A DNA stretch of 61,481 nt, counting the filler, from Heterodontus francisci (lineage: Eukaryota): NCBI RefSeq assembly GCF_036365525.1. It is 4 parts of 4 records of this genome, joined end to end, with 100 filler letters (N's around TTAATTAATTAA, not from the genome) between each part and the next. Parts side by side here need not be neighbours in the genome. Positions count along the whole stretch, not along the records: positions 41,997 to 61,481 come from NW_027140453.1; 3 more parts are not named here. One strand, given 5' to 3'. Positions 41,997 through 61,481 of this stretch are shown here, one piece after another; within the stretch, counting starts at the first letter, position 1, and each line of letters starts with the position of its first letter. The notes below the pieces were generated by a model. The model had not been told where the DNA came from. It did not search any database and saw only the letters and a list, made by a program, of their open reading frames with translations. Made by a program: the position numbers and the translations under genes.

Positions 41997-42112
41997 GTTT
42001 TTTTCTAAAGTTTATGGTCTCTCCCCTTTCTTCAAACTGATGGGGACAAACTGGCCGACAGTTTTAATAATTACTGAGACCACTGATATGTTTCAACAAA
42101 TATCTCACTCAC

Positions 42113-42170
42113 CCAGGAGTGTTAACTTAGTGCCGTCTCCAAAATATGATAGCTGGGTATTTCCTGCACC
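42113..42170 (-). CDS. TRBJ: TCR beta J segment J2.6: GAGNTQLSYFGDGTKLTLL
   Basis: FGDG motif; donor GTGAGT (42107-42112); RSS read on + as CACATCA(42171)-12-ACGAAAACA(42190-42198). Confidence 0.9.
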
Positions 42171-42720
42171 CACATCATCATGTGACAACACGAAAACATT
42201 CCTCAATAGCGCCCTGCCAGTTTTCAGTGTCCATCTCATTAATATTTGATATTGCCCTTTGACTAACATGAGCTGACCATACAACAAAGTACACGCATAA
42301 AATAACCGGGTGGGGAGGTGGGGGAGAGGGGGCCTGACCATTAAAGCCAGCAACATTCACAGTACCGTCTATCCATCCATCTGTGAATATGTTAGATGTC
42401 CACAGATACAGTGCTTATAATACTGGAAGATTTTACATGGAGTTGTTCATAATTATTAATTAACTTCTACACACAAGTTGGGGACCAGATAGCTCAGTTG
42501 GCTAACGTGCCAGTTAGAACAATGCTTACAGAACGGGTTCATTTCTCACCATGTCTGGGGAAGGCAAGGGGAAGCCTCCTCATAGACACTGCTCCACATT
42601 CATGCTCCTCTCTCCTGCTGGAGAAAAGGAGCAGAGAGCCAGTACATCAGATGACCACCAGCCTGCACAGACAAGATGAACCCAGCATCCCTGGCTTCAT
42701 TGAATGAAGGTCTAACTCAC

Positions 42721-42777
42721 CCAATACTGTTAGAGCCGAACGTTCTCCAAAATGTAAAGGCTGGTCGCTCCCGCCTG
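42721..42777 (-). CDS. TRBJ: TCR beta J segment J2.5: GGSDQPLHFGERSALTVL (non-canonical FGER)
   Basis: Donor GTGAGT (42715-42720); RSS CACTATG(42778)-12-ACCAAAACA(42797-42805). The second Gly of FGxG is Arg. Confidence 0.82.
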
Positions 42778-42932
42778 CACTATGCTGAACAACATTACCA
42801 AAACACACCTTTGGATAGACCGATACACCGACAGAAAAGTAGCTACGTAGATCGATAAACATAAAGATGGATACACAGACCGATACATTGTGGATGATGG
42901 AACAATAGATGTTTATATAGATGGTAACGTAC

Positions 42933-42982
42933 CTAAAACAGTTAACTTGGTACCAGCTCCGAAGTAGTAAATATCAGAAGAG
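42933..42982 (-). CDS. TRBJ: TCR beta J segment J2.4: SSDIYYFGAGTKLTVL
   Basis: Donor GTACGT; RSS CACAAAG(42983)-12-ATCAAAACC(43002-43010). Confidence 0.9.
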
Positions 42983-44522
42983 CACAAAGCTAAATCCCTG
43001 CATCAAAACCTCTCACCTCTCTCTGATTCTTGTCCTGAAGGAGCCTTTCACAACTAGAAAGAACCTACAGGAGTATTGGCACAAAGGAACATAGAAATAC
43101 TGTAGCTGGAGTAGGCCATTCAGCCCGTCGAGCTTGTTCTGACATTCAGTGAGGTCATGAATCATCTGTATTGTAACCCCATTAGCCTGTTTGTGTTCCA
43201 GACCCTTTTCCTAACAAGGCTCTATCATTCTCAGATTGGGAAGTGACAATTGACCCTGTGGCCTCAGCAGTTTCATAGGGGAGAGAGGCCCAGATTTCCA
43301 CCACCGTTTGTTCAGTTATGTCCTTTCTGGCATCACCCCTGAACGGCCAAGCTTTGATGTTAAGCTAATGCTCCTCTCCACCCTCACCCTTGTTCTGGGC
43401 TCTGACACCCGTGTAAATTGCAGCTCTATCTACCCGATCGAATCCTCTCATTATCTTAAACACATCAGTTGGATCAATCCTTAATCTCCAATGCTCAACA
43501 TCTCTAAGCAACCTGCCCCCACAATTTAATTCCGGCATGATTCTGGTAAATGAGGAAAGATCATTCGCAATCTGCCCTGGACTTTCAGCTCACGTTCCCC
43601 AGGCCGTTCAATGTGCATTCTCCACCCAGTCTCCATTCACAAATTTTAAAAATCCCTTTTGATATTTCTCATCCATTCAAACGCTTCAGGTTAATGGGGA
43701 ATACATCAAATCATATCGACACTTCAGCACCGAACCAGGCCATTCGGCCCACTACATCCTAGCCGATTAAATGCTCCACATTATCCTTCTCACACCCTCT
43801 TCATCTCACCCCATCAATAGGTCCTTTTATTCCTTTCTCCCCCATATGTTTATCCAGCTTCCCTCTTAAAAACATCTCTGCTATTTGCCTCAGCCCACTC
43901 CCTGTGGTAGTGAATTCCACATTCTTGCCACTCTCTGGTTGAAAAGGCTTCTCCTGAATTCCATATTGGATTTATTAGTGACTGTCTTATATTGATGGTC
44001 CCCTGGTTCTGGTCTCCCCAACAAGTAGAATCATCTTGCCTCTGTCATAATCATAAAGACCTCGATCAGGTTATCCTCTCTGCCTTCTCTTTTCTAGAGA
44101 AAACAGCACCAGCCTCTTCATTCTTTATCTGTAGTTATATTCTCTCAGTTTTGGGAGCTCACTTGTAAATATGTTTTGTTTTGCTCTATCCAGTGCCTCT
44201 GCTTTTTTAATCATATGCAGAACAGAACGGCATACTAAAGAACTGAATCTGACAGTTTTCGTTCTGTGTCTGTGTCCTCTTGTTCTGCTCTCATTTGCAG
44301 CTACAATTGCCGTTTGCACTGTTTATTTTAGAGACCCTCCCTTATGTTCCACTCAAACCCCTTTCCATCCAGTGACATGAATTCAGCAGTTGTAGGTCTC
44401 CCTTTGTAAGCTCAAGAGTCGAAATTAATTCACCAAATTCCCATATTTTCACTCCCTCGACCACCCCACGTGAATTCCCAAATTGAATCAACTTTTCCAG
44501 CATTAGGAATGCATTCACTCAC

Positions 44523-44572
44523 CTAAAACCACCAGTTTGGTCCCATCTCCGAAATATGCTTCTCCAGCATTA
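44523..44572 (-). CDS. TRBJ: TCR beta J segment J2.3: NAGEAYFGDGTKLVVL
   Basis: Donor GTGAGT; RSS CACAATG(44573)-13-GCAAAATCC(44593-44601). Confidence 0.92.
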
Positions 44573-45162
44573 CACAATGGTATGGGGCTGTCGCAAAATC
44601 CCCCTCAAGTCTAGATTGTTAAGTCTGTTCCATTGAAGTTCTGACTGTGTCAATGGCCTGTAAAGGTCGTTGGAACATGGGGACAGGAGGTGGCCATTCA
44701 GCCCTTCGTACCTGTTCCACCATTCAGTTAGATCAGGGTTGTTCTGAACCTTAACTCCATCATCCCACCTTGCTTCTGTAAACCTCAATACTTCTGTTTA
44801 ACAAAAATCAAACAATCTTGGATTTGAACTTATCAATTGACCCCCAGCCTCAACAGTATTTTATTTGTTGTGGGGGGTTCGGGGAGAGTTCCTGATCTCA
44901 CCCCTGAACGGCTCGAATTTAAATTGTTCTGGATTTCCCCCAACCTGAAGAAGCAGTTTCTCTCTTTCTATCCAACACCTCAAGCACCTCGATTATATCA
45001 ACCCTTAATGATCTAGGTTCAAGGGACTGTCAGCTTAGTCTGAGTAACCAGTCCTCATGATTTAACCCCTTTCTGCATCTAATATCTGAACTTACTCCCC
45101 GCGATTTTTTAACCGCATATAGACCTCGATGTTGATCTGATAGGAAGAACAGAGTCCCTTAC

Positions 45163-45210
45163 CGAAAACTGTTAACTTGGTCCCGTCGCCGAAGTAAGCT
45201 ATGTTTCCTG
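45163..45210 (-). CDS. TRBJ: TCR beta J segment J2.2: GNIAYFGDGTKLTVF
   Basis: Donor GTAAGG; consensus heptamer CACAGTG(45211)-12-TCATGAACT (weak nonamer). Confidence 0.9.
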
Positions 45211-45591
45211 CACAGTGGCCTAAACCCAGTCATGAACTGGCCCGGGAACTGTTACCCTTGCAGCTGAACGGGTCTGTGCCGGGCGGTTTACCGTGGAACA
45301 CATCACCAAGCGGGTGTCCCGTTGGACTGGTCTTTGCGAACCAGAAGGAAGGGCCAGTGTCGTCCCGGGGAGAGAAATACCGCGCCAAAGTGACATACGG
45401 ACGCTTGTGGCAGGAGGGAAATTAGGCGCAATTCTCTGCGGTCATGAGACAGATCTAACCGACTGACTAACTCGTTAAACTGTCCGGGGTTGGGGGGGGG
45501 GGGGGGGGTGGTGGGGGAGGGGGTGCAGTAAGCTGTGAATGCACACAGCTACACATGAAGGTAGAGAGAACAAAAGACCCCATTATCTTAC

Positions 45592-45642
45592 CTAACACCG
45601 TCAGTTTGGTGCCGGTCCCGAAATTGTGTGGTGCTGTCTGGG
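45592..45642 (-). CDS. TRBJ: TCR beta J segment J2.1: QTAPHNFGTGTKLTVL
   Basis: Donor GTAAGA; RSS CACATCA(45643)-12-ACATCAACC(45662-45670). Confidence 0.9.
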
Positions 45643-46124
45643 CACATCAGCAAATCATGTTACATCAACCCGGTCGAAAACGGTTTGCTACAAGTGGGCT
45701 GCTCAGCGTTTAGGAAGCACTGGTCAAGACAATCAGGAGGCACAAAGCAGCTTACAGCCAATGAAGCAGTTTGTTTAGGAAGTGGTCACCACAGGGAGAC
45801 AGAGCAACTGATATTGTACCAAGGAAGTCCCATCAAACAGCAGTGAGATTAATGAGCAGATCATTGTGATGTTGGTTGAGGGATCAATATTGGTCCCAAG
45901 ACACCGGGGTGGTGTTTCAGGGGTTGAAGAGTAACCAGTTTTCACACAAATAACACAGTTATTCTCTTTTCCAGAGGAATGCTCTAGGTTATAAAGCTGG
46001 ACCATTCTGAGGCATCTACAAGATTGAAAGGGCCCAGCTCCCGCCATAATCCAGAGGAGATGTTTATTCGTTTACTCTGTTGCCACTGCTCTTCTGCTGA
46101 TCTTCCTCGAGGTGTGTAGAGCGA

Positions 46125-46163
46125 GGTTTTTGTACGGAGGCTGCATTGGATTCTATCACAGTG
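46125..46163 (-). promoter_or_regulatory. 3' 23-RSS of D2
   Basis: Minus strand: CACTGTG ATAGAATCCAATGCAGCCTCCGT ACAAAAACC (23-nt spacer, consensus nonamer). Confidence 0.95.
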
Positions 46164-46176
46164 TCCCCCCTGTCCC
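46164..46176 (-). CDS. TRBD: TCR beta D segment D2: GGGACAGGGGGGA (GTGG/GQGG/DRG)
   Basis: First 11 nt match the conserved TRBD1 GGGACAGGGGGC; flanked by 12- and 23-RSS; open in all three frames. Confidence 0.95.
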
Positions 46177-46204
46177 CACGGTGATAGACACTCATACAAA
46201 AAAG
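46177..46204 (+). promoter_or_regulatory. 5' 12-RSS of D2
   Basis: CACGGTG ATAGACACTCAT ACAAAAAAG. Confidence 0.95.
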
Positions 46205-46689
46205 AACGCGAATTTTGCAAGGCCCTGCCTCTGAAAAGACTCCCGAGGGCTTCACTTGGTGAAGTCAGTTGAGATTGAGCTGCTGAAAGTTTTTTAGTCC
46301 TTTGGACCAGAATTATAGGCCGTTCATTCCGTCTCAAAACTGTTAGCAGGAACAGGAGGTGGCCATTCCGCCCCTTCACAGCCTGCTACACAGGTGCAGC
46401 AAGAGACCATTCAGCCCCTCTAGACCTTGTTACACAGGAAGAAGAGGAGGCCCATTCAGCCCCTCTTGAGCTGCTTACACAGTAACAGGCCCATTCATCC
46501 ACTCAAGCCTCCTTCCTTTCCTCTACTTCCTTCCTTCCTTTCTTTCCGTCCTTCCATCCTTCCTCCCTTCCTTCCTTTCATGGTTTTTTTCTTGCTTGCT
46601 TTCTCTCTTTCTTTCTCTCTCTCCATTCCATCTCTCTGTTGCACCCCTTCTCCCCTTCCCCCTCCCCCATCCCTTACCCGCTTCATGAT

Positions 46690-46927
46690 CTGCATTCTCT
46701 CTTCTACAACGTGCAGGACCTCAGGACATACCGGCCACGGGACCTCAAACAGAAGCCACTTACTCTAGACAGTAAATCGTTCACACTGCTATCTCTTATC
46801 TTATCACTCAGAGAGACCCATGTCTGCCAAACTAGTGCAAGTTTCCCAGGTGTCGTGTTGATGTGCGCGGTGCTGTTATCATTCCTGCAGATCTCATTGC
46901 ACACCAACCCCCATCGCCATGCACCTG
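46690..46927 (-). promoter_or_regulatory. Candidate D2 germline promoter (PDbeta-like) block
   Basis: Paralogous to 56645-56876. Shared E-boxes CAGGTG (46847) and CACCTG (46922), and GATA sites TTATCA (46801, 46876). Confidence 0.4.
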
Positions 46928-47796
46928 ACATGAGGGAGAAAGGAATAGAAGTTTAGATGGTGTAGTGGGGGGGGAGAGGAGGCTCATGTTCAGTATCACC
47001 ACTGGCTTGATGACACATTTCTGGGGGGATTCGAGCAATGTTTGAAAATGAATAATCCGCCCTCTGAGAAAATGGGTCAAAAAAGGAACTCTTTCCTTAA
47101 CAACACTGTGGAAATACCTAAACCACATTGAACGCAGGCGTGACGCCAGCAAAATGATAATGTTGCTGGGCTAGTAATCCTGCAGCCCGGGCTAGTGTTC
47201 TGGTTGTGTGAATTCAAATGGCCGCAGATGGGATTTAAATTCAGCTGATTCATAAAAATCTGTCAGGGTGCCATGAAACTGTCGTCGATTGTCATAAAAA
47301 CCCATCTACCATCTTATCTGGGACTCCATACCTGCAGCATGCAGTTGACTGTTAACTGCCCTCTGAAATTGCAAAGCACTCAGTTCAAGGGCAATTAGGG
47401 ATGGGCAACAAATGTTAGCCTTGCCATCGGTGCCCACATCCCATGACAAGAATAAAAACATGGCCTAACAAACCACTCAGAAGGCAATTATGGGTGGCCA
47501 ATAAATGCATCCCAGCACGAATTAACAATGACTTTTCCTGTTCATTTTTGTCTGTATTTTGCTCCCAATCTGTGCCTCTCTGCATATGGTTGCCTCCCTA
47601 GTTTTCTTCCACTCTCCACCTCGCCTTTCCTCTATGTTTAATTGTTTTAACCTTTGCTTCTTTACTGCAATGCTTACTGTTTATTTTTCCAAATTTCATG
47701 TTCTCTCCCCTTTCTTCAAACGGAAGGGAGCAAACTGCCCAACAGTTTCAGTGCTGATTGAGCCCACTGATATACTTCGACCAATATTCTACTCAC

Positions 47797-47854
47797 CCAG
47801 GACCGTTAACTTCGTGGCATCTACAAAATATGATGGATGGTTACTTCCTGCTCC
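47797..47854 (-). pseudogene. TRBJ: TCR beta J pseudo/ORF segment (J6 paralog): GAGSNHPSYFVDATKLTVL
   Basis: FGxG is changed to FVDA; heptamer CACATCA retained but nonamer degenerate (ATTCATCAA); donor intact. Confidence 0.82.
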
Positions 47855-48375
47855 CACATCACCATGTCACAACATTCATCAATAGCGTCCTGCTAATTTG
47901 CATTGTCCCTATCATTAATATTTGATATGGGCCTTTGAGTGTCATTGGCCAAAGTAAACTCATAAACTAACCGGGGTAGTTGGCAATTAAAACTCGAAAC
48001 ATTCCCAATACTGGCTCTCCATCAATGTATGGACCAGTTAGTCAGATGTCCACAGATACAGCTCTGACAATACTGGAAAATTTTACTTGGAGTTCGTCAT
48101 AATTATTAAGTAAGTTGTGCATGCAGGATGGGGACCGATTAGTTTGGTTAGCTAGATGGCTCACGTGTGATTCAGAGCAAGGTCAACAGCAGGGGTTCAG
48201 TTATCGTCTTGTTCTGACGAAAGTAACGGGAAACCGCCTTACCTACCTTTTTCCCTTGTCATTCTCATCTCTCCTGCTGGAGAAAAGGAGCACAGAGCCA
48301 TGGACAGAACATCTGCATGACACAGGCAATATGAAACCAGCCATCCTGGCTTAATCGAATAAACATGTAACTCAC

Positions 48376-48432
48376 CCAAAACTGTTAGAGTCCAGCCTTC
48401 CCCAAAATGTAGAGTCTGGATGTTCCCGCCTA
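48376..48432 (-). CDS. TRBJ: TCR beta J segment (J5 paralog): GGNIQTLHFGEGWTLTVL
   Basis: Donor GTGAGT; RSS CACTATA(48433)-12-ACCAAAACA(48452-48460). Confidence 0.85.
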
Positions 48433-48585
48433 CACTATACTAAACAACAGTACCAAAACACAGCGTTGGGTAGACAGGTACAGTCTCAAACAAGTAATGT
48501 ATCTATATCTAAACACATAGATGGATGCACAGATACATTGTGGATCGATCGAACAATGGATATTTGCACATTTATGTAGATGGGA

Positions 48586-48650
48586 TATTACCTAAAACTT
48601 AGATCCAGTTCCGATTCAGCAGAGCAAAACCTAGATCCCTGAATAAAACC
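48586..48650 (-). pseudogene. TRBJ: Internally deleted J pseudogene (J4 paralog)
   Basis: Aligns with 42927-43010 (CCTAAAAC..CCAG.TCCGA..CAG.AGAG..TA.ATCCCTG..AAAACC) but is ~17 nt shorter and has lost the heptamer CAC. Confidence 0.7.
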
Positions 48651-48924
48651 TCTCAACTCTCTGTGGTTCTATCCCAAGAGAGCCTTTCACAACAATGGAG
48701 AACCGACAAGTACAGGAATATTGGCTGACAGCAGCACGAGAGCATAAATTGACCGTTCAGCCCTTCGAGTAGGATCCGACATGCAAAAGGATCATGTATC
48801 TTCGTATCGTCAAGGTGGATGGAAAGAAAGGTGCAGAGCTGAGTGGTTAAGTGCACAGCTCTCAATGGTGGATTGATGGAAATCGGACAGTCCAGAATTT
48901 CAGGATCACAAAGATCTCGGAGAG

Positions 48925-49133
48925 TTGTAGAGGCTGGAGGAGGTTACAGAGATAGGAAGGGTTGTCGGGGCTGGAAGAGGTTACAGAGATAGGGAGGGAT
49001 GTAGGGGCATGGAGGAAGTTATAGACATAGGGAGGGTTGTCGGGACTGGAGGTGGTTACAGACATAGAGAGGGTTGTAAGGGACTGGAGGAGGTTACAGG
49101 GATAGGGAGGGTTGTAGGGTGCTGGAGGAGGTT
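48925..49133 (-). repeat. Short inverted array of the 37-bp L2-derived repeat
   Basis: GGCTGGAGGAGGTTACAGAGATAGGGAGGG units, the reverse complement of the 1-6918 unit. Confidence 0.85.
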
Positions 49134-49259
49134 GAGGCGCTTTTAAAAAACTCCTTCATGGGATGTGGGCGTCGATGACAAGGCCAGCATTTGTTACCCA
49201 TCCCTAGTTGCCCTTGACAACTGCGTGGCTATTTCAGAAAGCAGTTACGAGTAAAGCAA

Positions 49260-49870
49260 AATAGTTAATAGGTAGAATGAAGTAGAAGTCGTGTTTCAGC
49301 TATACAGAGCCCTGGTTACACCACATCTGGAGTTCCTCTGAGCATTTATGGGCACCAGACATTAGGAAGGATATGCTGGTCTTGGGGGAAGTGTAGTGTA
49401 GATTAAACAGACTGATTCTTGGACGCCAAGGGTTAAATTGCAAGGAAAGATTCGACATTTCCTATTCTTTGGAAAAGAGAAGGTTAAAGGGTGGTTTGAG
49501 CAAAGTTTTCAAGATATTAAGGGGAATGCATGATGTAGATGGAGAGAAACGATCTCCATTGGTTGTGCAGTCTAGATCTCCGGGACAGAGTTTAAGAATT
49601 AGAGCCAGAACTTTTCAGGCATGAAATTAGAAAACATCTTTTCACATAAAGGATGGTAGAAGTTTAGAACTCTCTTCTGCTGGAACAATTGTCAATTTTA
49701 AATCTCAAATTGATAGATTTTTGTTAACCATAGCTATTAAGGGATTATGGGGCTATGGGGGTAGATGGAGTTAGGTCACTGATCAGTCATGATCGCATTG
49801 ATTGGCAGAACAGACTCGAGGGGCCGAATGGACTACTCCTGCTCCTGTGTACCGATGATCCTATGTTCCT
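49260..49870 (+). mobile_element. CR1 LINE 3' fragment
   Basis: QLYRALVTPHLE..SLEKRRLKG motifs and 3' tail GGGCCGAATGGACTACTCCTGCTCCT. Confidence 0.75.
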
Positions 49871-50882
49871 GTAACTTCTATTTAAACATAGAGTCAGCAT
49901 TCTGCTTCAGTTAGAGTGTCCCAAATTCTGACAACTCTGAGTGAAAAGGAATCTAGTAATTGTCCTTGTAGATCTTTTGTCAATGATTTTAAATATCTGA
50001 CCTTTGTTTATTGACCCATCCACCAGTAGAAATAATTTCCCCTTCAAGTAATTGTCCAGTCCCCCTTTTGAAAGTTACTATTGAGTCTGTTTGCACCACC
50101 CTTTCAGGCAGCGCATTCCAGATAACAACACACCGCATAATTGTTTTATTCTTCATATCACCCCTGTTTATTTTGTCAATTACCTCAACTCTGTGCCCTT
50201 TGTTTACCAACGCTTCGAGCATTGGAAATTGTTTCTGAGCATGTACTGTGTCCAAAGCCTTCATTGCTTTGGACACCTCTGTCAAATCCCCCCTAAACTT
50301 TCTCTGCTCTAGTCTCTAGATGCAACTGAAGACCCTCATCGCTGGAACCAGTCGAATAAATCATTCGTGCAACCACTCTAAGGCCTTGACATCCATCCTA
50401 ACATGTGACACCCACAATTCTCCAGCTGGGACCTAACCAGCGATTCATCGAGGTTCAGCTTAACTCCCTTGCTCAACTCCTCGTCAATCCTTCTTTAACG
50501 AAGGTACTTTCCAGCTTCCTCAACTCTTTATTCTAAATTTCTTGATTGTCACGTATTTGTCCCTGTACCTCACTCCTATCATCAACTCGCATTACGCCGA
50601 TTTAGCTACATTAGGGACTGGATTAGGCCATTCAACCTCTGATATCCAAGGTACTTATCACATGTCGATTTCCACATGCACAATACGTCTCTAGTTTGTT
50701 TCAGGAAATATTCCATATGGGGCTCGGAAGTAATGCATGAAGCCGGAACACAAATACAAGGTGTATGTTTATATATAAGGTCCTCATATCCACAACTAGG
50801 TTTGAATAATTTTAAATTTCAACTAGACATCCCTCTGATTCCACTTTCCTTTAAAGAGCTAATTCGATTCTATCTCACTTAC

Positions 50883-50934
50883 CTAAAACCATGAGTTTTG
50901 AATTACCCCCAAAAGTATAACCATCGTTGCCTGA
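50883..50934 (-). pseudogene. TRBJ: TCR beta J segment J1.7 (probably non-functional): SGNDGYTFGGNSKLMVL
   Basis: Donor GTAAGT and open frame, but FGGN instead of FGxG, and RSS CGCAATG (invariant CAC broken)-12-ATCAGAACT. Confidence 0.75.
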
Positions 50935-51674
50935 CGCAATGTTACACTTTTGTATCAGAACTCGCGTTTCTTTAACTCGATACACAATAGTTAATGAACA
51001 TAGTTGGAACATTTTGCCTTGTGTTATATTCATTATTCCACCCTATTGCTCTTTATCTTATATTCTGTTACAATTGATCTCCTTGTCTCTGTCTCTTTTT
51101 CACTGTTTTAAATCTAATTTCCCATCTCCCTCCAGTTTTGTCTGATGTTTGCTCTCCATCTGGAGTGAAGAAGAATGGGGGATGATGGTCTGGGAAATTC
51201 TAAGATTCAGAGGGCGCTTGACAGGGTAAATGCTGAGAGGATGTTCCCCTGTAGAATTAAAGGGCGCAGTTTCAGAATGAGGGGTCGCTCATTTAGGACG
51301 GAGTGGAGGAGGAATTTCTTCGATCAGGGAGTCGTGAATCTTTGGAATTCCCTACTCCACAGCGCTGTGGAGGCTGAGTCCGTGAATGCATTCAAACTGA
51401 GATAGAGAGCAGAGCCAAGGATTATGGAGAACAGGTAGGAAAGAGGGATCGAGGCCAACATCAGATCAGCCATGATCTCTGGTTGTAAATTCCTCTCTCA
51501 CCAGCCCTCCTCCAATCTCCTACATTTAGCTATTTAAATTCTTGCTTCTTCAATGCAATGCTTACTCTTTTGCCTGTTTTCACATTCTCTCTCCTTTCTT
51601 TAAATTGAAGAGACTAAACTAGTCGACGTTTGCAATGCTAGTAAGAGACATATTTTGACGAACATCTCACTTAC

Positions 51675-51733
51675 CCAGGACTGTTAATTTAGAGCCATCT
51701 CCAAAATACACAAGGCTGAATACTCCCTGCTCC
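51675..51733 (-). CDS. TRBJ: TCR beta J segment J1.6: EQGVFSLVYFGDGSKLTVL
   Basis: Donor GTAAGT; RSS CACATCA(51734)-12-ACAAAAACA(51753-51761). Confidence 0.9.
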
Positions 51734-52077
51734 CACATCATCACCTCACAACACAAAAACATTCCCCAACTCTCTTCTGGAAGAAAAGAAATTCACTGCC
51801 CCATTCCTTAATATTTGATAGTGGCCTCTGGTTAACGCAAGCTAACTGTAAGTTAATGTAAACTCGTGGACTAACCAGGCAGTTTGCAGTTATAGCTCTC
51901 AGAATTCCCAAGACTGTCTGCCCCGTCTCTATGTGGACCTGTTCGTCAGTTATCCACCGTGGCAGTCCTGACAATAGGAGATTTTCTCTAAGTCCCTCAC
52001 AATTATTCATTCAATCCTTCTTGCAAGATGTTTACAGGTGACCCTTGCTTCATTGAAAACAAAGAAACTGAACTCAC

Positions 52078-52134
52078 CCAAAATCGTCAACGTGGACCCG
52101 TCCCCAAAATGTAGCAGGTTGGTATACCCGCCCG
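52078..52134 (-). CDS. TRBJ: TCR beta J segment J1.5: GGYTNLLHFGDGSTLTIL
   Basis: Donor GTGAGT; RSS CACTGAA(52135)-12-ACCAAAATA(52154-52162). Confidence 0.88.
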
Positions 52135-52345
52135 CACTGAACTAAACAACAATACCAAAATACAACGATGGGTAGACAGATGTATGGACAGACAAATAGA
52201 TAAGTAGATGGACAAACAGACAGACAGATGGATCCACAGACCAACAAATAGATAGGTCCATTGATAGATAAAGAAATAGAAAGACTTACAGATGAAAATA
52301 GATGTTTACATATATAAATATCTACATGTGCAAACATAATCTTAC

Positions 52346-52395
52346 CTAAAACAGTGAGTTTCGTCCCAGCTCCGAAATAATAAATCTCACCAGAG
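52346..52395 (-). CDS. TRBJ: TCR beta J segment J1.4: SGEIYYFGAGTKLTVL
   Basis: Donor GTAAGA; RSS CACAATG(52396)-12-ATTAAAACA(52415-52423). Confidence 0.9.
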
Positions 52396-53905
52396 CACAA
52401 TGATAAACTCATGTATTAAAACATCACCTGTCTTTGAGTCCTTTTCCAAAGGAGCCCCTCATAATAAGGGAGAACCTACAAGTATAAGGAAATTTTGTCC
52501 AAAGGAACATAGCAACTGGGGAACAGGAGTAGACCATTCAGCCCTTCGTGCTTATTCCGACATTTAATTAGATTATAAATCAATTGTACCTTAACGCCTT
52601 CGACCTGCCTTCTTGGTTCCATAACCTTTAGCATCTTTGCCGATCAAAAAATCATCAACCACACATTTGAAATTTTCGACTGACTCCCTCAGCTTTCTGT
52701 GGGAGAGATTTCTGGATTCCACAGGGCATTTTGTAAACAAGTCCTTCTTGACATCATTCCTGAATGGTCTAGCTATCAGTGTAAGGTTTTGCTCTCTTGT
52801 TCTGGACCCGTCACACCAGAGGAAATATCAGATCCTATCATTATCTTAAACACATCAATTGGATCACCCCTGAATCTCCAATTCTCAATTTACTGCAACC
52901 CTACTTTAAACAACACATCGTCATAAATTAAACTCTTTTAATACCGGTATTATCCTGGTGAATGAGGAAAGCTCATGGGGCCCTTGACACCTCATTGTCC
53001 ACTGGATATGGATAGCTCACCAGTTCGATTAGTAACTTGAAAATAGTGTGTCTCAAAATGGTTTCATCCATTGCTGCTCGAGGCCAAGAGGGAATATATA
53101 GAATTACATAGAATTTACAACACACAAACAGGCCATTCAGCCCATCTGCTCCATTCCAGTGTTTGCACTCCATTGAGACTCCTCTCATCCCCTTCATTTA
53201 ATCCATTTTTTTTTTATCCAATCTACTTTTTTAAACCCACTCCTTGTGGTTGTGAGTTCCACATTCGCACCACTGTCTGGGTAAAGAAATTTCTCCTGAA
53301 TTCCCTATTGAATTTATTACTGACTATCTGACATTTATGATCCCCCCCGTTCTGGTCTCCCCACAAGTGGAAAAAACTTCGGTGTGTCTACCCTATCGAA
53401 ACCGCTTTCAAAATCGTGCAGACCTCGACCAGGTCACCCCTCAAACTTCACTGCTCTCGAGAAAGGAGTTCCAGTCTGTCCGACCTTCCCCAATAGTTAC
53501 AACGTCCCAGTTTGGGCAGCACAGCTGTTAATCTGTTTTGTTTTACCTTATCCAGAGCCTCTACATCATTTATTTTATAATATGCAGACCAGAACTGCAT
53601 ACTGAACGATGCAATCTGACATTTTTCGTTCTTTGTCTGTGTCCTCTTGTTTTGCTCTCACAAGCGCAATCATTCTATTTGTATCTACATTGCTGTTTGT
53701 TCTGTTTCTTTTAGCGACCCTCCCTTATGTATCCACTCAAACCCCTTCCCTACAGTGAAACGAATTCGGCAGTTGTAGGTCTCCCCTTGTAAGCTGAAGA
53801 ATTGAAATTAATTCACCAAAGTTCTACATTTTCACCCCCTCGACCATCCCACGTGAATTACCAAATTGAATCAACTTTTCCAGTATTAGGAATGCATTCA
53901 CTCAC

Positions 53906-53955
53906 CTAAAACCACCAGTTTGGTCCCATCTCCGAAATATTCTTCGGTATTGGAG
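53906..53955 (-). CDS. TRBJ: TCR beta J segment J1.3: SNTEEYFGDGTKLVVL
   Basis: Donor GTGAGT; RSS CACACTG(53956)-13-ACAAAATCC(53976-53984). Confidence 0.92.
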
Positions 53956-54588
53956 CACACTGGTATGGGGCTGTCACAAAATCCCCCCCAATCCCCTTAG
54001 ATTGTTAATTCTGTTCCATTGAAGTTCCTATTATGTAAATGACCGTACAGGTCGTAGGAACATGGGGACAGGAGGTGGCCATTCAGCCCTTCGAGCCTGT
54101 TCCACCATTCAGTTATTTCAGGGTTGATCTGAATCTTAACTCCATCATCCCTCCTTGGTTCTGCAACCCTCAATATTTTTGTTTTACACAGGTCGATCAA
54201 TCTTGGATTTGAATTTATCAATTGACCCCCAGTCTCAACAGATTGTTTTGGGGAGAGAAGGAGGGGGAGAGAGTTCCTGATTTCCACTACCCTTTGTGTG
54301 AAGAAGTGCTTCCTGATATCACCCCTGAAAGGTGATAATTTAAATTGTTCTGGACACTCCCCAACGTGAGAAAGCAGTTTCTCTCTCTATCTATCCAACA
54401 CCTCAAACCCCTCCATTATATCAGCCCTTAATGTTCTATATTCGAGGGACTGTCAGCTTAGTCTGAGTAACCAGTCCTCATGAGTTAACCCTTTAATGTA
54501 TCTCATATCTGAACATTACTCCTGGTGATTTTTTAACTAGATATAGATTCTGATCGATAGGAGGAACAGAAATACAGAGTCACCTTAC

Positions 54589-54636
54589 CCAAAACTGTCA
54601 ACTTGGTCCCATCGCCGAAGTAAGCTATGTCTTTTG
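54589..54636 (-). CDS. TRBJ: TCR beta J segment J1.2: KDIAYFGDGTKLTVL
   Basis: Donor GTAAGG; RSS CACGATG(54637)-12-TCATGAACA. Confidence 0.9.
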
Positions 54637-54877
54637 CACGATGCTCTAAACTCAGTCATGAACAGACCCGGGAGATGTTCCCCTTGTAACTGAACGAGAC
54701 AGGACGGGGTGGTTTAGAGGCCAGGGTCATATTGGACTGGTCTTTGCAAACCAGAAAGAAGGGCCAGTGTCATCAGCCTGACTTTTTAAACCGCCCGCGG
54801 AGGGTTGGGGGGAATAAGCTTGGAATACAAACAGCTGGACATGAAGGGAGTGGGGGAAAAACGCCCCATTATCTTAC

Positions 54878-54928
54878 CTATCACTGTCAGTTTGGTGCCG
54901 GTCCCGAAGTTGAGTGGTGTGTTGGTAG
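54878..54928 (-). CDS. TRBJ: TCR beta J segment J1.1: TNTPLNFGTGTKLTVI
   Basis: Donor GTAAGA; RSS CACGTCA(54929)-12-ACATCAACC(54948-54956). Confidence 0.9.
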
Positions 54929-55411
54929 CACGTCAGCAGATCACGTTACATCAACCCGGTCAGAAACTGATTGCTAAAAGTGACCTGCTCAGCATTTAGG
55001 AAGCACTGGTCAAGACAATCAGGACACAGAAAGCAGCTTACAGCCAATGAAGCAGTTTGTTTAGGAAGTAGTCACACAGGGAGACGCAGCAACTGATATT
55101 GTACCAAGGAAGTCCCATCAAACAGCAATGAGATTAATGAGCACATCATTCTTTGTGATGTTGGTTGAGGGATCAATATTGGTCCCAGGACACCAGGGTG
55201 GGGTTTAAAGGTTAAAGAGTAACCAGTTTCCACACAAATGACACAGTTATTCTATTTTCCAGAGGAATATTCCAGGTTATAAGGCTGGACCATTCTGAGA
55301 CATCTTTATAATAAAAACGGCCCTGTTCCCGCCATAATCCAGGGCCATGTTGACTCCTTTACTCTGTTGTCACTGCTCTTCTGCTGATCCTCCACCAGGT
55401 GTGTTGAACGA

Positions 55412-55450
55412 GGTTTTTGTACGGAGGTTGCATTGGATTTTATCACCGTG
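55412..55450 (-). promoter_or_regulatory. 3' 23-RSS of D1
   Basis: Minus strand: CACGGTG ATAAAATCCAATGCAACCTCCGT ACAAAAACC. Confidence 0.95.
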
Positions 55451-55463
55451 TCCCTGCTGTCCC
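55451..55463 (-). CDS. TRBD: TCR beta D segment D1: GGGACAGCAGGGA (GTAG/GQQG/DSR)
   Basis: GGGACAG core flanked by 12- and 23-RSS; paralog of 46164-46176. Confidence 0.95.
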
Positions 55464-55491
55464 CACGGTGATAGACACTCATACAAAAAAG
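55464..55491 (+). promoter_or_regulatory. 5' 12-RSS of D1
   Basis: CACGGTG ATAGACACTCAT ACAAAAAAG, identical to the D2 12-RSS. Confidence 0.95.
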
Positions 55492-55642
55492 CGGAACACG
55501 AAATTTACATTTCCTATCCGCTTAAACGGCTCCCGAGGGTTTCACCTGGTGACGGCAGTTGAGACTGAGGTGCTGAAGTTTACTTAGACCTTCGGAGCAC
55601 AATTCGAGGCCATTCAGAACCTCTCAAAGCTGTTTCACATTC

Positions 55643-56227
55643 GCAGGAGGAGGACATTCAGCCCCTCTAGAACCTGCTACACAGGAACAGGAGGAGGGCA
55701 TTCAGCCCCTCTCCAGTCTGTTACGCAGGAACAGGAGGAGGACATTCAGCCCCTCTAGAGCCTGCTACACAGGAACAGGAGGTGGGCATTCAGCCCCTCT
55801 CCAGTCTGTTACGCAGGAACAGGAGGAGGACATTCAGTCCCTCTAGAGCCTGCTACACAGGAACAGGAGGAGGACATTCAGCCCCTCTCCATTGTGTTTC
55901 ACAGGAACAGGAGGAGGCCATTTAGCCCCTCTCCAGTCTGTTACACAGAAACAGGAGGAGGACATTCAGTCCCTCTCCAGTCTGTTACACAGAAACAGGA
56001 GGAGGACATTCAGCCCCTCTCCAGTCTGTTGCACAGGAATAGGAGCAGGACATTCAGCCCCTCTAGAGCCTGCTACACAGGAACAGGAGGAGGGCATTCA
56101 GCCCCTCTCCAGTCTGTTACACAGGAACAGGAGGAGGACATTCAGCCCCTCTCCAGTCTGTTCCACAGGAACAGGAAGAGGGCATTCAGCCCCTCTCCAG
56201 TCTGTTACACAGAAACAGGTGGAAGAC
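55643..56227 (+). repeat. 44-bp minisatellite (AGGAACAGGAGGAGGACATTCAGCCCCTCTCCAGTCTGTTACAC), CR1-tail derived
   Basis: About 13 units up to the gap. A diverged short paralogous array lies at 46347-46500. Confidence 0.88.
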
Positions 56228-56576
56228 NNNNNNNNNNNNNNNNNNNNNNNNNNNNNNNNNNNNNNNNNNNNNNNNNNNNNNNNNNNNNNNNNNNNNNNNN
56301 NNNNNNNNNNNNNNNNNNNNNNNNNNNNNNNNNNNNNNNNNNNNNNNNNNNNNNNNNNNNNNNNNNNNNNNNNNNNNNNNNNNNNNNNNNNNNNNNNNNN
56401 NNNNNNNNNNNNNNNNNNNNNNNNNNNNNNNNNNNNNNNNNNNNNNNNNNNNNNNNNNNNNNNNNNNNNNNNNNNNNNNNNNNNNNNNNNNNNNNNNNNN
56501 NNNNNNNNNNNNNNNNNNNNNNNNNNNNNNNNNNNNNNNNNNNNNNNNNNNNNNNNNNNNNNNNNNNNNNNNNNNN
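56228..56576. other. Assembly gap (349 N, no linker)
   Basis: N run. Confidence 0.97.
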
Positions 56577-56644
56577 AATTCCTTCCCTCTGTTGCACCCC
56601 TTATCCCAATCTCTGCCTCCGTTCCTTACCCTTTTCTTTACCTG

Positions 56645-56876
56645 CATTGTCCCTCCACAACCTGCAGGATCTCAGGAAGCACCGGCTACGGGTCCTCAAA
56701 CAGAACACACTTAATGTATACAGTAAATCGTGTACACTGCAATCTCTTCACCTATCACTGAGAGAGTCCCAGGTCTGCCAAACCAGGGGTGTGCAAGTTC
56801 CCAGGTGTTCTGTTGCGGTGCTGTTATCATTTCAGCTGATCTGTCTGCACACCAACAGCCATCGCCCATGCACCTG
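56645..56876 (-). promoter_or_regulatory. Candidate D1 germline promoter (PDbeta-like) block
   Basis: CAGGTG (56802), RUNX-like TGCGGT (56814), GATA TTATCA (56824), CAGCTG (56833) and CACCTG (56871); paralog of 46690-46927. Confidence 0.4.
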
Positions 56877-57149
56877 GTCCTCAACTCTAACATTGAGGGT
56901 TTTCCTCTTTTGTTCGGTTCTGATGCTGCTTGCTCTTCAGATGAAGGTAACGCGAGGTTCTGGGTTCAAGAGGTTCAAAAAATTTCTAACAATAAAGGCG
57001 GACATTGAATGAAGGATTGGGATATGGACACAAAACATTTTCAAAGAAAGGCGATTATGGAGTCATCAAAGTAAGTACATTTCCCTTTGTCCTTTTGCAA
57101 ACATGGCACAAAGTAGGAATCTATTGCTGCTTCTAAATGTTCCCTGGAC

Positions 57150-57700
57150 ATTATAGAGCGATGAGAAGTCATGTTAAACTTGTATTGAATCTAGCTTAGG
57201 CCACAGTTCGAGCACTTTTCACAGTTCTGGTATTCATTTTAAAGAGATATAGAGATACAGGAGAAGCGGCAAAAAAGTAATGACAAGGATGATATCAGAA
57301 CTGAGAGGTTATAATTATCAGGAAGGGCTGTAAAGAGAAGGCTGAAGGGTGATCTGATGGATGGATTTAAGATTATGAAAGAGTTTTTGATAGGGTTGAC
57401 GTGCAAAAGATGTTTTCACTTGTGGGGGAGTCAGGAACTCCGAACCATCAATAGAAAGATAGTCACTAATAAATAACATCGGGAATTCAGGAGAAACCTC
57501 TTTACCCAGAGAGTGGGAGGAAGTAGGGAGTTGGATAGGTGAATAGCGGAGATGTATTCAAGAGGGAATCTGGATAAACAAATGGGGGTGGGGGAGATTT
57601 GGAAGGATCTACTGATGGGGTGAGATGAAGACGGGAGCGAGGAAGCTCGTGTGGAGGATGAACGCCAGCATGCATGTGTTGGGCCGAATGGCATGTTTCT
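57150..57700 (+). mobile_element. CR1 LINE 3' fragment
   Basis: AGAAGGCTGAAGGGTGATCTGAT..GAATTCAGGAGAAACCTCTTTACCCAGAGAGTG and tail TGGGCCGAATGGC. Confidence 0.7.
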
Positions 57701-57793
57701 TTGCGATTTGCCTCAGGACACAGTCCAAGGGGTATAGTGTGTCTCACCTGAGAAGGCAGACCAGTCGCTGGTTTAAAATCTCAGGTGCAAATT

Positions 57794-58602
57794 CAGCACT
57801 CCCTCTGCACTGACCGTCTGAGAGTGCAGCACTCCCACAGTACTGACCCTCGGACAGTGCATCACTTCCTCAGTACTGACCCTCTGACAGTGCAGCACTC
57901 CCTCAGTACTGACCCTCTGACAGTGCAGCACTCCCTCAGTACTGACCCTCTGACAGTGCAGCACTCCCTCAGTTCGGACACTCAGACAGTGCAGCACTCC
58001 CTCAGTACTGACCATCTGACAGTGCAGCACTCTCTCAGTACTGACACTCTGACAGTGCAGCACTCCCTCAGTACTGACACTCAGACAGTGCAGCACTCCC
58101 TCAGTACTGACCCACTGACAGTGCAGCACTCCCTCAGTACTGACCATCTGAGAGTGCAGCACTCCCTCAGTACTGCCCCTCTGACAGTGCAGCACTCTCT
58201 CAGTACTGACACTCTGACAGTGCAGCACTCCCTCAGTACTGACACTGTGACAGAGCAGCACTCCCTCAGTACTGACCCTCTGACAGTGCTGCAATCCCTC
58301 AGTACAGACACTCTGTCATGCAGCACTCTCTCAGTACAGACACTCTGCCAGTGCAGTGCTCCCTCAGTACTGACCCTCTGACAGTGCAGCATTACCTCAG
58401 TACTAACCCTCTGACAGTGCAGCACTCCCTCAGTACTGACACTCTGACATGCAGCACTCCCTCAGTACTGACCCTCGGACAGTGCAGCACTCCCTCAGTG
58501 CTGACCATCTGATGGTGCAGCACTCCCTCAGTACTGACTCTCCAACAGTGCAGCACTCCCTCAGTACTGACCCTCCAACAATGCAGCACTCCCTCAGTAC
58601 TG
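57794..58602 (-). repeat. Inverted array of the 33-bp SINE-derived repeat
   Basis: CAGTGCAGCACTCCCTCAGTACTGACCCTCTGA units, the reverse complement of the 7123-11010 family. Confidence 0.92.
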
Positions 58603-58636
58603 AATTAACGAAATTAGCTGCATTGGTGATCGATGG

Positions 58637-58650
58637 GCGGTAGGTGGCGC
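58637..58650 (+). promoter_or_regulatory. CTCF-like motif
   Basis: GCGGTAGGTGGCGC compared with core CCASYAGRKGGCRC. Confidence 0.4.
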
Positions 58651-59611
58651 TATTGCTCCACTAATCCTAATCGCTTCTTCATTTCACAGCCGTTCCTTCC
58701 TCTGACAGCGACCTCAGGTCTGCCATTCCCTCCCAAACCCCCTCCACATCTCTCTCCTCCAAATCTTCCCAGCTTTGGCCCACACCTCGTAACAATTTCT
58801 GCTGTAACTCTGTGTCAAATAGTTGGCAGATTTACACTCTTCGGGCCATTTATCTCGGGACGGTGAAGTCGCTACATAAATGCAAACTGCAGCTGTTTAA
58901 TTACACGCTCGTGCTGACCTGTGAACAGGAGGTTTGGGACTTGGAACATGTCTTCCAGAAACGGACTCTGTCGGCAGTTTCGCTTGACGTTTCTTCCACG
59001 GGGGGAGACGAATTAAACTCTGCATTCACTGAAAATTTGATTCGAATTTGTCACGACCGGGATTTCGCGTCCTGTTGCTATAGTTTTCAGCACTTGTATG
59101 TTGTCGCTTGATGTAACGTCCTCTTAAAATCTATCACCATCCTCCTCACGGTTCACAATGCTGCAAAGTTTGCAAATGTGCCCTGCACACGCAAGTCTAT
59201 GTTATTAATATCGATCAAGACAAGCAGTGGTCCCTGGAGAACCCCACTATATACCTTCCTTCAGAATGAACACCAACTGTTTACCACTACTCTGTTCCAT
59301 GTTGCTTTGTATCCATGTTGATAATGCCCCTTTTATTGCATGGGCTTTATCTTTGCTGACAAGCCTGTTATGAAGTACTTTATCAAACGCTTTTTTTGAA
59401 GTTCATGTACACCACATCAACCGCAATACCCTCATTAACCCTCTCTGTTACCTCATCAAAAAATGTGTATCCGACTCTTGGTTTCCTGATTAGTCTACAG
59501 AGTGCTGGTTGTTTCAAAATGCCATGCAGTATTCATCATCTCTACAGATGGGAGAACCTCAAAGCACCCTGTATGACTGACCACTTCCTCTGATGTGTCT
59601 TTATATATCAG

Positions 59612-59922
59612 CCGTGGTTTAGTGGGGAGTACCTCGGCACTGAGTCAGAGGTTTGTGGGTTTAAGTCCCCGCACCATGATTTAAGCATAAAATCTAGGAT
59701 GACACTCCCAGTGCAGGACAGAGAAAGTGCTGCACCGTGTGGAGGTGTAGCACCGAGGTACTCTCTTTATTTTGGCTGAGATGTTAAAACGAGGTCCCGA
59801 CTGCAGACGGGAATGATCCCATAGCCACTATTTCGGAGAATAACAGGAGCATTCTGGAGGATTATCTGGGGCAATAGACATCCCTAAACCAACTTAACTA
59901 AAACAGATTGTTTGGTCATTCT
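59612..59922 (+). mobile_element. tRNA-headed SINE, degenerate
   Basis: GCCGTGGTTTAGTGGG..GGGTTTAAGTCCC head and GATGACACTCCCAGTGCAG..GAGATGTTAAAACGAGG body. Confidence 0.65.
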
Positions 59923-59931
59923 CAGTTTCCA

Positions 59932-59945
59932 CCAGGAGATGGCGC
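59932..59945 (+). promoter_or_regulatory. CTCF-like motif
   Basis: CCAGGAGATGGCGC, one mismatch to the core consensus. Confidence 0.5.
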
Positions 59946-60023
59946 AGTTCTCCGCAGAACTTGTGGCTGCAAATAGGATTCGATCAGATGGAGAGACAAT
60001 GAATTTCCATTCAGCGAGTGATC

Positions 60024-60037
60024 GCGCCCTCTGGCGG
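60024..60037 (-). promoter_or_regulatory. CTCF motif
   Basis: Minus strand GG-CCGCCAGAGGGCGC, a close match to the CTCF core. Confidence 0.6.
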
Positions 60038-60699
60038 CCGCAGAGGGAATTTTCATCACCATTCATCATTTGGATCATCCATCTGACGTAAAGGAGTCGC
60101 AGTCCGAGTATGATCAATGCTACCTACTTCCAGTGAGATGTCGGATTATTTATTGCCATGTGCAAAGATGACCAGATCGTGACAAATGGAGCGAAACTCC
60201 CCACCCCCGCAACCCCTCCACTAACACTATTGGATCTAAGATGCATCAGTTGGAATTCATTCCTGGTTATGTGCATTCACCTCACATTGGAATTTCGAGA
60301 CAGGGTGCCAACCGGCAGTTTTATCACGCTGCTCGATCTTGGACCCTGCAAGTAAAGGGTTACTATCTTGTTGGCACGTGGAAAAGACTTCTGATCTGCG
60401 TCCCTGCAATTTTGCTTCAATCATCAGAGAACACATCAGCTAAGGAACTCACTTTCGACTCCACTGGCATAATGGAGGTTGGAAATGTGCACAGCATCTC
60501 GAATCCGTAAAGGCTGGAGGACATCTTACCGTCAGGAGCCCATTAAAAGTCTTCCACTTCATAAAAGCTAAAGAAAAGAAATGACGGAATGTTGTAGATT
60601 TCGGGAACTTCAGTCCAATCTGAAAATATCTGGGGTTGCAGCAAAAGTGGTCGAGAAACAGGGTGAGTAATTTCAATGACAACATTCTTCCCATTATTG

Positions 60700-61410: not shown

Positions 61411-61481
61411 AGTGGTTCCTGCGCGTTTGCAGTGTCAGGTCATTGTGTCATCACATACGGTCTAAAATATTATCTTTCTCT

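What the first reader, a model, noticed from the sequence alone, without database searches (positions are those of the whole stretch)
42107..55491. TCR beta locus with tandem D-J clusters and no intervening constant gene (D-J7-J3-D-J6)
Seen: two RSS-flanked D segments and 16 J segments on the minus strand. The intervals between clusters (46.2-47.8 kb and 48.65-50.87 kb) contain repeats and short unique stretches in which I find no Ig-C exon. Known: human and mouse TRB duplicate whole D-J-C units, and chicken has a single D-J-C. Inference: only the D-J cassette (~5 kb; 41997-46927 vs ~51500-56876) was duplicated, so all J would splice to one downstream Cbeta, skipping an unrearranged D-J cluster. 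I cannot tell whether this layout is already described for cartilaginous fish.
Basis: partly seen in the sequence, partly recalled or inferred. Interest (0 to 1): 0.8.

Follow-up and report, generated by a model that had tools for sequence, protein, structure and literature searches.

The report
Two TCR-beta D-J cassettes, no C between
This 19.5-kb piece holds a genuine germline T-cell-receptor beta D-J region in which the D-plus-six-J cassette is duplicated without a constant gene in between, and RNA shows that the upstream cassette is rearranged and spliced to an exon lying off the piece.

Summary
On the minus strand there are two D segments (46164-46176 and 55451-55463), each with a 5' 12-spacer and a 3' 23-spacer recombination signal. 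There are 16 J-like segments. Twelve are canonical (FGXG, 12-spacer signal, phase-1 GT donor) and four are deviant or broken.

The layout is D2, six J, one odd J, a partial copy of three J, D1, six J. The two cassettes are 64-83% identical, so they are old paralogues and not haplotypes.

No Ig constant exon lies between them. No open frame there looks like one, Pfam finds nothing, and there is no Cys-to-Cys C-domain signature.

RNA contigs from one run show two upstream-cluster J spliced, exactly at their donors, to one and the same exon start. That 24-nt sequence is absent from the whole piece. A third upstream J is joined to a V-D end reading AVYFCAW.

So the upstream cassette works and splices over at least 11.9 kb, across the second D-J cassette, provided the constant gene lies downstream. 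That constant gene is off the piece, and no reads were laid on the downstream J. "One shared C" therefore remains an inference.

A TRB locus with several D and a single C is described for a skink. I found no description for cartilaginous fish. I rate this a modest new variant of a known kind.

The parts
55412..55491 (-). D2 (core GGGACAGCAGGGA, 55451-55463) with its 5' 12-spacer signal and 3' 23-spacer signal
   Evidence: nonamer CTTTTTTGT, 12 nt, heptamer CACCGTG, D, heptamer CACGGTG, 23 nt, nonamer ACAAAAACC
54878..54928 (-). J C1 (TNTPLNFGTGTKLTVI, donor gtaag). Seen joined to a V-D end in RNA.
   Evidence: In one search the X5 loose end behind 54923 reads, on the minus strand, AVYFCAWDNG, in frame with the J.
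54589..54636 (-). J C2 (KDIAYFGDGTKLTVL, donor gtaag). Spliced at its donor in an abundant RNA contig.
   Evidence: In one search there is an X5 loose end before 54588, and the contig over 54593 has depth 584.
53906..53955 (-). J C3 (SNTEEYFGDGTKLVVL, donor gtgag). Spliced at its donor to the same exon start as C2.
   Evidence: In one search there is an X5 loose end before 53905, and X7 record 26 (313 nt) has the J in its middle.
52346..52395 (-). J C4 (SGEIYYFGAGTKLTVL)
52078..52134 (-). J C5 (GGYTNLLHFGDGSTLTIL)
51675..51733 (-). J C6 (EQGVFSLVYFGDGSKLTVL)
50883..50934 (-). Odd J X (NDGYTFGGNSKLMVL). FGGN replaces FGXG, and the heptamer CATTGCG lacks the critical GTG, so it is probably not recombined.
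   Evidence: In one search only an unspliced contig (50657-51137) runs over it.
47654..48725 (-). Partial unit B, a copy of the last three J only. It holds B5 at 48376-48432 (FGEG, intact), a truncated remnant near 48590-48625, and B6 at about 47797-47860 (FVDA, both glycines lost).
   Evidence: 71.6% identity to 42000-43080, 66% to 51542-52030
46125..46204 (-). D1 (core GGGACAGGGGGGA, 46164-46176) with its 5' 12-spacer signal and 3' 23-spacer signal
45592..45642 (-). J A1 (QTAPHNFGTGTKLTVL)
45163..45210 (-). J A2 (GNIAYFGDGTKLTVF), with a perfect heptamer CACTGTG
44523..44572 (-). J A3 (NAGEAYFGDGTKLVVL)
42933..42982 (-). J A4 (SSDIYYFGAGTKLTVL)
42721..42777 (-). J A5 (GGSDQPLHFGERSALTVL); the second glycine of FGXG is replaced by R
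42113..42170 (-). J A6 (GAGNTQLSYFGDGTKLTLL), the last J before the piece ends at 41997
46928..47653 (.). Interval between unit B and unit A: no Ig-C exon
48726..51541 (.). Interval between unit C and unit B: a 37-bp tandem repeat, retroelement-like frames and the odd J; no Ig-C exon
56229..56576 (.). Assembly gap (N) inside the 44-bp tandem repeat upstream of D2. It does not lie between the two cassettes.

Best explanation
This is the germline D-J part of a T-cell-receptor beta locus, read on the minus strand.

An ancestral cassette of one D followed by six J was duplicated in tandem without a constant gene. A further partial copy of the last three J and one odd J lie between the two copies. 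The order is D2-J(C1..C6)-JX-J(B4..B6)-D1-J(A1..A6).

Shown:
- Both D have the 12/23 signals.
- Twelve J are canonical.
- The upstream cassette is recombined to V-D.
- Its J are spliced from their own donors to a single exon start, GCGAAAACGATACGATTAGGCCTGC on the minus strand. Read by eye with the last base of the J, this gives Gly-Glu-Asn-Asp-Thr-Ile-Arg-Pro. That sequence is not in the piece.

Inferred:
- That exon is the first exon of a constant gene lying downstream of the last J, below 41997.
- A VDJ made in the upstream cassette is therefore transcribed through the rest of its J, the partial copy and the whole D1-J cassette. All of this, at least 11.9 kb, is removed as one intron. It is removable because unrearranged J have donors but no acceptors, as in IgH, Ig kappa and TCR alpha.
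- D1 can join only its own six J. D2 can join any downstream J.
- A failed VD2J2 join can be followed by V to D1-J1. This gives two tries per allele, as the mammalian D-J-C tandem does, but with a shared constant gene.
For: - D cores and signals. The D1 core matches 11 nt of the vertebrate-wide TRBD sequence GGGACAGGGGGC quoted in PMC11754216.
- J anatomy: (12 on the minus strand, 0 on the plus strand; shuffles mean 0.01).
- Duplication at 64-83% identity, with the D and their signals about 93% identical.
- No C exon between the cassettes.
- RNA: run X5 has loose ends at 53905 and 54588, one base past the exon ends 53906 and 54589. The overlapping 20 nt are identical. The contig over J C2 has depth 584.
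- RNA: an X5 loose end behind 54923 gives an in-frame AVYFCAWDNG-NTPLNFG junction.
- RNA: 16 nt of that V end equal a nurse-shark V-beta primer printed in PMC5931798.
- RNA: X5, but not X6 or X7, covers unique intronic sequence from 50071 to 53879 at depth about 5-14. That is what primary transcripts running on from the upstream J would give.
- The exon start is absent from the whole piece at up to 3 mismatches.
Against: - The constant gene is not on the piece, so its position, number and linkage are not seen.
- No reads were laid on the downstream cassette, so its use and its splice partner are unknown.
- The RNA data are Logan contigs. They give no strand and no reliable level, and the run is RNA only by a guess of the tool. 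The J-to-exon junctions do argue for RNA.
- I had no C-beta protein in hand, so a badly decayed C remnant between the cassettes was not searched for by similarity.
- The piece looks like a short scaffold with one gap. Long-range correctness of the join between cassettes rests on an ungapped contig (41997-56228) and on short independent contigs that lie collinear but do not bridge it.
Confidence: 0.75

Rival explanations
1. Assembly artefact. In the real genome each cassette is followed by its own constant gene (an ordinary D-J-C tandem), or the two cassettes belong to separate loci. The assembler dropped or mis-joined the segment with the C gene.
For: - The piece is short, ends 116 bp after the last J exon and carries a 348-N gap.
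- The region is full of repeats.
- The DNA contigs laid are 400 nt or shorter and bridge nothing.
Against: - The gap lies upstream of D2, not between the cassettes. 41997-56228 is ungapped.
- The cassettes differ by 17-36%, so they cannot be confused or collapsed as alleles.
- The interval holds a diverged partial J copy that is itself part of the duplication pattern, not a junction of unrelated sequence.
- DNA and RNA contigs of another sample lie collinear over 49.8-54.7 kb.
- Collapse of two near-identical C genes would delete what lies between them. It would not remove only the C.
Confidence: 0.1
2. The layout is real, but the downstream cassette (D1 with J A1-A6) is a decaying copy. In practice only the upstream cassette feeds the constant gene.
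For: - J A5 has lost the second glycine (FGER).
- The neighbouring partial copy B is clearly decaying (FVDA, a truncated J).
- No expression data were obtained for A1-A6.
Against: - Five of six A-cluster J keep FGXG, a GTG-ended heptamer, a 12-type spacer and a phase-1 donor. A2 has a perfect CACTGTG.
- D1 and both its signals are intact and score as high as D2.
- D and signals are about 93% identical between copies against 64-83% around them, which suggests constraint on both.
Confidence: 0.1
3. The region is not TCR beta but another D-bearing antigen-receptor locus with the same signal geometry, such as TCR delta.
For: TCR delta D and J carry the same 12/23 and 12 spacers. Multiple D before a single C is the delta pattern (own knowledge).
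Against: - The D core is the conserved TRBD sequence.
- The J read FGxGTKLTVL, the beta and lambda type.
- The V end joined to J C1 equals nurse-shark V-beta primer sequence over 16 nt.
- Each D is followed by its own J set rather than the D being grouped.
Confidence: 0.03

Closest known systems
Mammalian and axolotl TRB: tandem D-J-C units (two in human, mouse and rabbit; three in sheep; five in axolotl; PMC12529555, PMC5278385)
   Same: One D followed by about six J forms the repeated unit. The D has 12/23 signals and the J has a 12 signal. Two cassettes in series allow a second try on one allele.
   Different: Here the repeated unit carries no constant gene. The upstream J must splice across the downstream cassette.
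Skink Tiliqua rugosa TRB: three TRBD, six TRBJ, a single TRBC (PMC11754216)
   Same: Several D segments serve one constant gene in a beta locus. The D core GGGACAGGGGG is the same.
   Different: The skink has only six J in all, and the text I could read does not give the order of D and J. Here whole D-plus-six-J cassettes are repeated. A single C is inferred here, not seen.
Channel catfish TRB (one D, 29 J, two tandem C) and zebrafish or duck TRB (D-J-C1-J-C2), as summarised in PMC5278385
   Same: They are translocon-like departures from the D-J-C tandem, with long J arrays and J that skip other segments when spliced.
   Different: Those loci have a single D and duplicate J and/or C. This one duplicates D with J and not C.
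IgH, Ig kappa and TCR alpha J clusters (own knowledge)
   Same: Unrearranged downstream J remain in the J-C intron and are spliced out, because they have donors but no acceptors.
   Different: In those loci no D segment with its own signals sits inside the J-C intron.

Membership tests
TCR beta (TRB) D-J region | D segment with a 5' 12-spacer and a 3' 23-spacer recombination signal | tested here: met
   both D have them; they score 13/16 and 15/16 and are the only such pairs in the piece
TCR beta (TRB) D-J region | Conserved TRBD core GGGACAGGGGGC | tested here: met
   D1 is GGGACAGGGGGGA (first 11 nt identical) and D2 is GGGACAGCAGGGA; the consensus is as quoted in PMC11754216
TCR beta (TRB) D-J region | J segments with a 12-spacer signal, FGXG and a phase-1 GT donor | tested here: met
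   12 canonical J, with 4 further deviant or broken copies
TCR beta (TRB) D-J region | Use in V-D-J-C transcripts | tested here: met
   a V-D junction on J C1 and donor-exact splices on J C2 and C3.
TCR beta (TRB) D-J region | Linked C-beta gene downstream of the J | not testable with these tools
   The piece ends at 41997, 116 bp past the last J exon. The exon start seen in RNA is absent from the piece.
Tandem D-J-C organisation (mammalian type) | A constant gene after each J cluster | tested here: not met
   no Ig-C frame or signature in 46.2-47.8 or 48.65-51.6 kb; the exon used by upstream J is not there. A decayed remnant was not searched for by similarity, because no C-beta query was in hand.
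TCR delta D-J region | Grouped D segments upstream of one J set; delta-type J and C | tested here: inconclusive
   The signal geometry is shared with beta. The D core, the J motif and the V end point to beta.

The most novel reading that the evidence does not exclude
In this (probably cartilaginous) fish the beta locus gains its second rearrangement attempt per allele, and much of its 12 usable J, by repeating only D-J cassettes in front of one constant gene. A complete, recombination-competent D-J cassette therefore sits inside the J-C intron of every receptor made from the upstream cassette. If the layout is shared among chondrichthyans, the D-J-C tandem of tetrapods would be a later elaboration of a multi-D translocon.
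Probability: 0.45. Interest if true: 0.55.

Novelty: new variant of a known kind. Interest (0 to 1): 0.45.

Why it matters
The arrangement of D, J and C decides which joins are possible and how many tries an allele has. It also decides how secondary rearrangement and allelic exclusion can work.

Beta loci described so far mostly repeat D-J-C, or J and C. A repeat of D-J alone gives the same rescue logic without a second constant gene. It leaves a live D-J cassette in the intron of a productive gene. That raises testable questions about continued D1-J1 joining and about D2-D1 joins.

It also gives a ready germline reference (2 D, 12-13 usable J) for repertoire work in this species.

It is not a new kind of system. 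A skink beta locus with three D and one C is already published.

Tried and rejected
- Two word searches with open frames that contain a J were meant to fetch J-C proteins of this or a related species. The aim was to get a C-beta query and to see downstream-cassette J joined to C. They returned nothing: 3 and 5 candidates, none scored. The third search was not spent.
- Pfam on frames upstream of D2 (56.7-61.2 kb) found nothing, and no V-type signal is in the piece. Rfam and the tRNA scan were empty.
- Nine paper searches and several full-text look-ups found no map of a chondrichthyan beta D-J-C region. The nurse-shark paper PMC3222143 is not held, and the elephant-shark supplement is not held.
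- Haplotype duplication was considered and rejected because the copies differ by 17-36%.
- Read laying could take only 6 kb once. I chose 49500-55499 (upstream cassette plus part of the interval).
The reading Gly-Glu-Asn-Asp-Thr-Ile-Arg-Pro was made by eye from the tool's loose-end letters. Only that 24-nt tag was searched, and only in the window.
Full report
**What is there**

The piece 41997-61481 carries, on the minus strand, an array of antigen-receptor gene segments.

Two D segments were found:
- D1 is GGGACAGGGGGGA at 46164-46176.
- D2 is GGGACAGCAGGGA at 55451-55463.
- Each is preceded by CTTTTTTGT, 12 nt, CACCGTG.
- D1 is followed by CACTGTG and D2 by CACGGTG, each then followed by 23 nt and ACAAAAACC.

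A scan of both strands for CAC-first heptamers with a nonamer at 12 or 23 nt (at least 13 of 16 matches) returns only these four signals. So the piece holds no third D and no V-type signal.

Sixteen J-like segments follow.

| Group | Segments | State |
|---|---|---|
| After D2 | C1 54878-54928, C2 54589-54636, C3 53906-53955, C4 52346-52395, C5 52078-52134, C6 51675-51733 | all canonical |
| Between | X 50883-50934 | FGGN; heptamer CATTGCG |
| Partial copy B | remnant near 48590-48625; B5 48376-48432; B6 about 47797-47860 | truncated; FGEG, intact; FVDA |
| After D1 | A1 45592-45642, A2 45163-45210, A3 44523-44572, A4 42933-42982, A5 42721-42777, A6 42113-42170 | A5 is FGER; the rest canonical |

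A strict J pattern matches 12 times on the minus strand and never on the plus strand. Shuffles give a mean of 0.01.

**Duplication, not haplotypes**

A self-comparison gave these matches:
- 43894-45364 aligns with 53236-54774 at 76.9% identity.
- 45521-46489 aligns with 54807-55779 at 83.5%.
- 46625-46927 aligns with 56578-56876 at 78.3%.
- 42689-43498 aligns with 52042-52888 at 63.6%.
- A third, partial unit, 47684-48725, matches 42000-43080 at 71.6% and 51542-52030 at 66%.

The two D with their signals are about 93% identical. Copies this diverged are old paralogues. They cannot be two alleles laid side by side.

The only gap, 56229-56576, sits in a 44-bp tandem repeat upstream of D2. The stretch 41997-56228 holds both cassettes and is ungapped.

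**No constant exon between the cassettes**

- None of the 23 stop-to-stop frames of 45 aa or more that overlap the intervals on the minus strand looks like an Ig domain.
- The ten largest gave no Ig family in Pfam at E up to 10.
- A scan for an uninterrupted Cys...[FYW]xCx signature gave only low-complexity or repeat-derived hits.
- The intervals hold a 37-bp tandem repeat (48919-49133) and retroelement-like frames.
- I could not run a similarity search with a real C-beta. Two word searches meant to fetch one found nothing. A badly decayed remnant is therefore not excluded.

**Expression**

One run search found DNA runs and three runs guessed to be RNA, all from one sample of the same species. 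I laid X1 (DNA) and X5-X7 on 49500-55499.

- X5 has contigs that end their match exactly one base past the exon ends of J C3 (place 53905) and J C2 (place 54588). The contigs continue with the same letters, ...GCCTAATCGTATCGTTTTCG on the plus strand. The extra matched base is explained if the next exon begins with G.
- On the minus strand the continuation is CGAAAACGATACGATTAGGCCTGC. Read by eye with the end of the J, this gives Gly-Glu-Asn-Asp-Thr-Ile-Arg-Pro.
- I did not send any joined sequence to a tool.
- The contig over J C2 has depth 584.
- A further X5 contig leaves J C1 at 54923 on its upstream side. On the minus strand it reads GCTGTCTATTTCTGCGCTTGGGACAACGGG. That is AVYFCAWDNG, in frame with NTPLNFG: a productive V-D-J junction.
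- Sixteen of those letters equal the nurse-shark V-beta 3 reverse primer printed in PMC5931798.
- X7 has a 313-nt contig with J C3 in its middle.
- X5 alone also covers unique intronic sequence between 50071 and 53879 at depth about 5-14. Primary transcripts running on from an upstream J would give that.
- The 24-nt exon start is absent from the whole piece even with three mismatches.

The upstream cassette is therefore recombined, transcribed and spliced to an exon at least 11.9 kb away if that exon lies downstream.

**What this does not show**

- The constant gene is off the piece.
- The data are contigs, without strand or true level.
- The DNA and RNA of that sample differ from the assembly at many sites. 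For example, there are eight substitutions in 54542-54634. The sample may be another individual or haplotype. That makes it independent support for the sequence, but its contigs are too short to bridge the cassettes.

**Mechanism**

- Shown: the anatomy and the use of the upstream J.
- From established V(D)J rules (12/23): D2 can join any downstream J. D1 can join only A1-A6. V-to-D1 joins delete the upstream cassette. After a failed VD2J2 join, a V upstream can still reach D1-J. This is the same two-shot logic as mammalian D-J-C tandems.
- From established splicing behaviour at IgH, kappa and TCR alpha: unrearranged J in the intron have donors but no acceptors, so the rearranged J splices straight to C.
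- Inferred: a single shared C lies just below 41997.

**Comparison with what is known**

- Tetrapod beta loci repeat D-J-C. Human, mouse and rabbit have two units, sheep three, axolotl five and Xenopus one (PMC12529555; PMC5278385).
- Zebrafish and duck have D-J-C1-J-C2. Catfish has D-29J-C1-C2.
- Salmonids repeat whole V-D-J-C loci (PMC10464911).
- The skink Tiliqua rugosa has three D, six J and one C (PMC11754216). Several D before a single beta C is therefore already on record.
- I found no paper that maps the D-J-C part of a chondrichthyan beta locus. That library lacks most subscription journals, so prior description cannot be excluded.

**Verdict**

The feature is real and correctly observed. 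It is a functional germline beta D-J region with a C-less cassette duplication, a modest new variant of a known kind.

Noticed in passing
window 57794-58603: A 33-bp tandem array with 24.6 copies at 88% match, consensus CAGCACTCCCTCAGTACTGACCCTCTGACAGTG. It gives long spurious open frames on both strands.
   Followed up: no
window 55644-56227 and 46363-46482: A repeat of about 44 bp that contains CATTCAGCCCCTC stands upstream of both D. There are 13 or more copies before D2, running into the assembly gap, and only 2.7 copies before D1. The array has expanded or contracted since the duplication.
   Followed up: partly
window 54542-54634 (J C2 and flanks): DNA contigs of run X1 carry eight substitutions relative to the assembly within 93 bp. 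The abundant RNA contig of X5 carries one of them (54593 A>C, synonymous in the J). This looks like a diverged allele or haplotype of the J region.
   Followed up: partly
window 54000-54386, 49992-50315, 51169-51402, 57321-57557, 60944-61204: Recurrent frames with the motif R-G-D-L-x-E-V...F-T-Q-R-V-V...W-N-x-L-P appear on either strand. Read depth there is very high in all runs (hundreds to thousands). These are interspersed retroelement tails. No family was assigned.
   Followed up: no
window 45486-45523: A long G-rich tract (GGGGGTGGGGGGGGAGGG, about two copies) lies in the intron between J A1 and J A2. It is absent from the matching place in the upstream cassette.
   Followed up: no
window 45521-46489 vs 54807-55779: The best-conserved block between the cassettes (83.5%) runs from J1 through the D and 300 bp upstream of it. 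It is a candidate germline D promoter region. No test was made.
   Followed up: no
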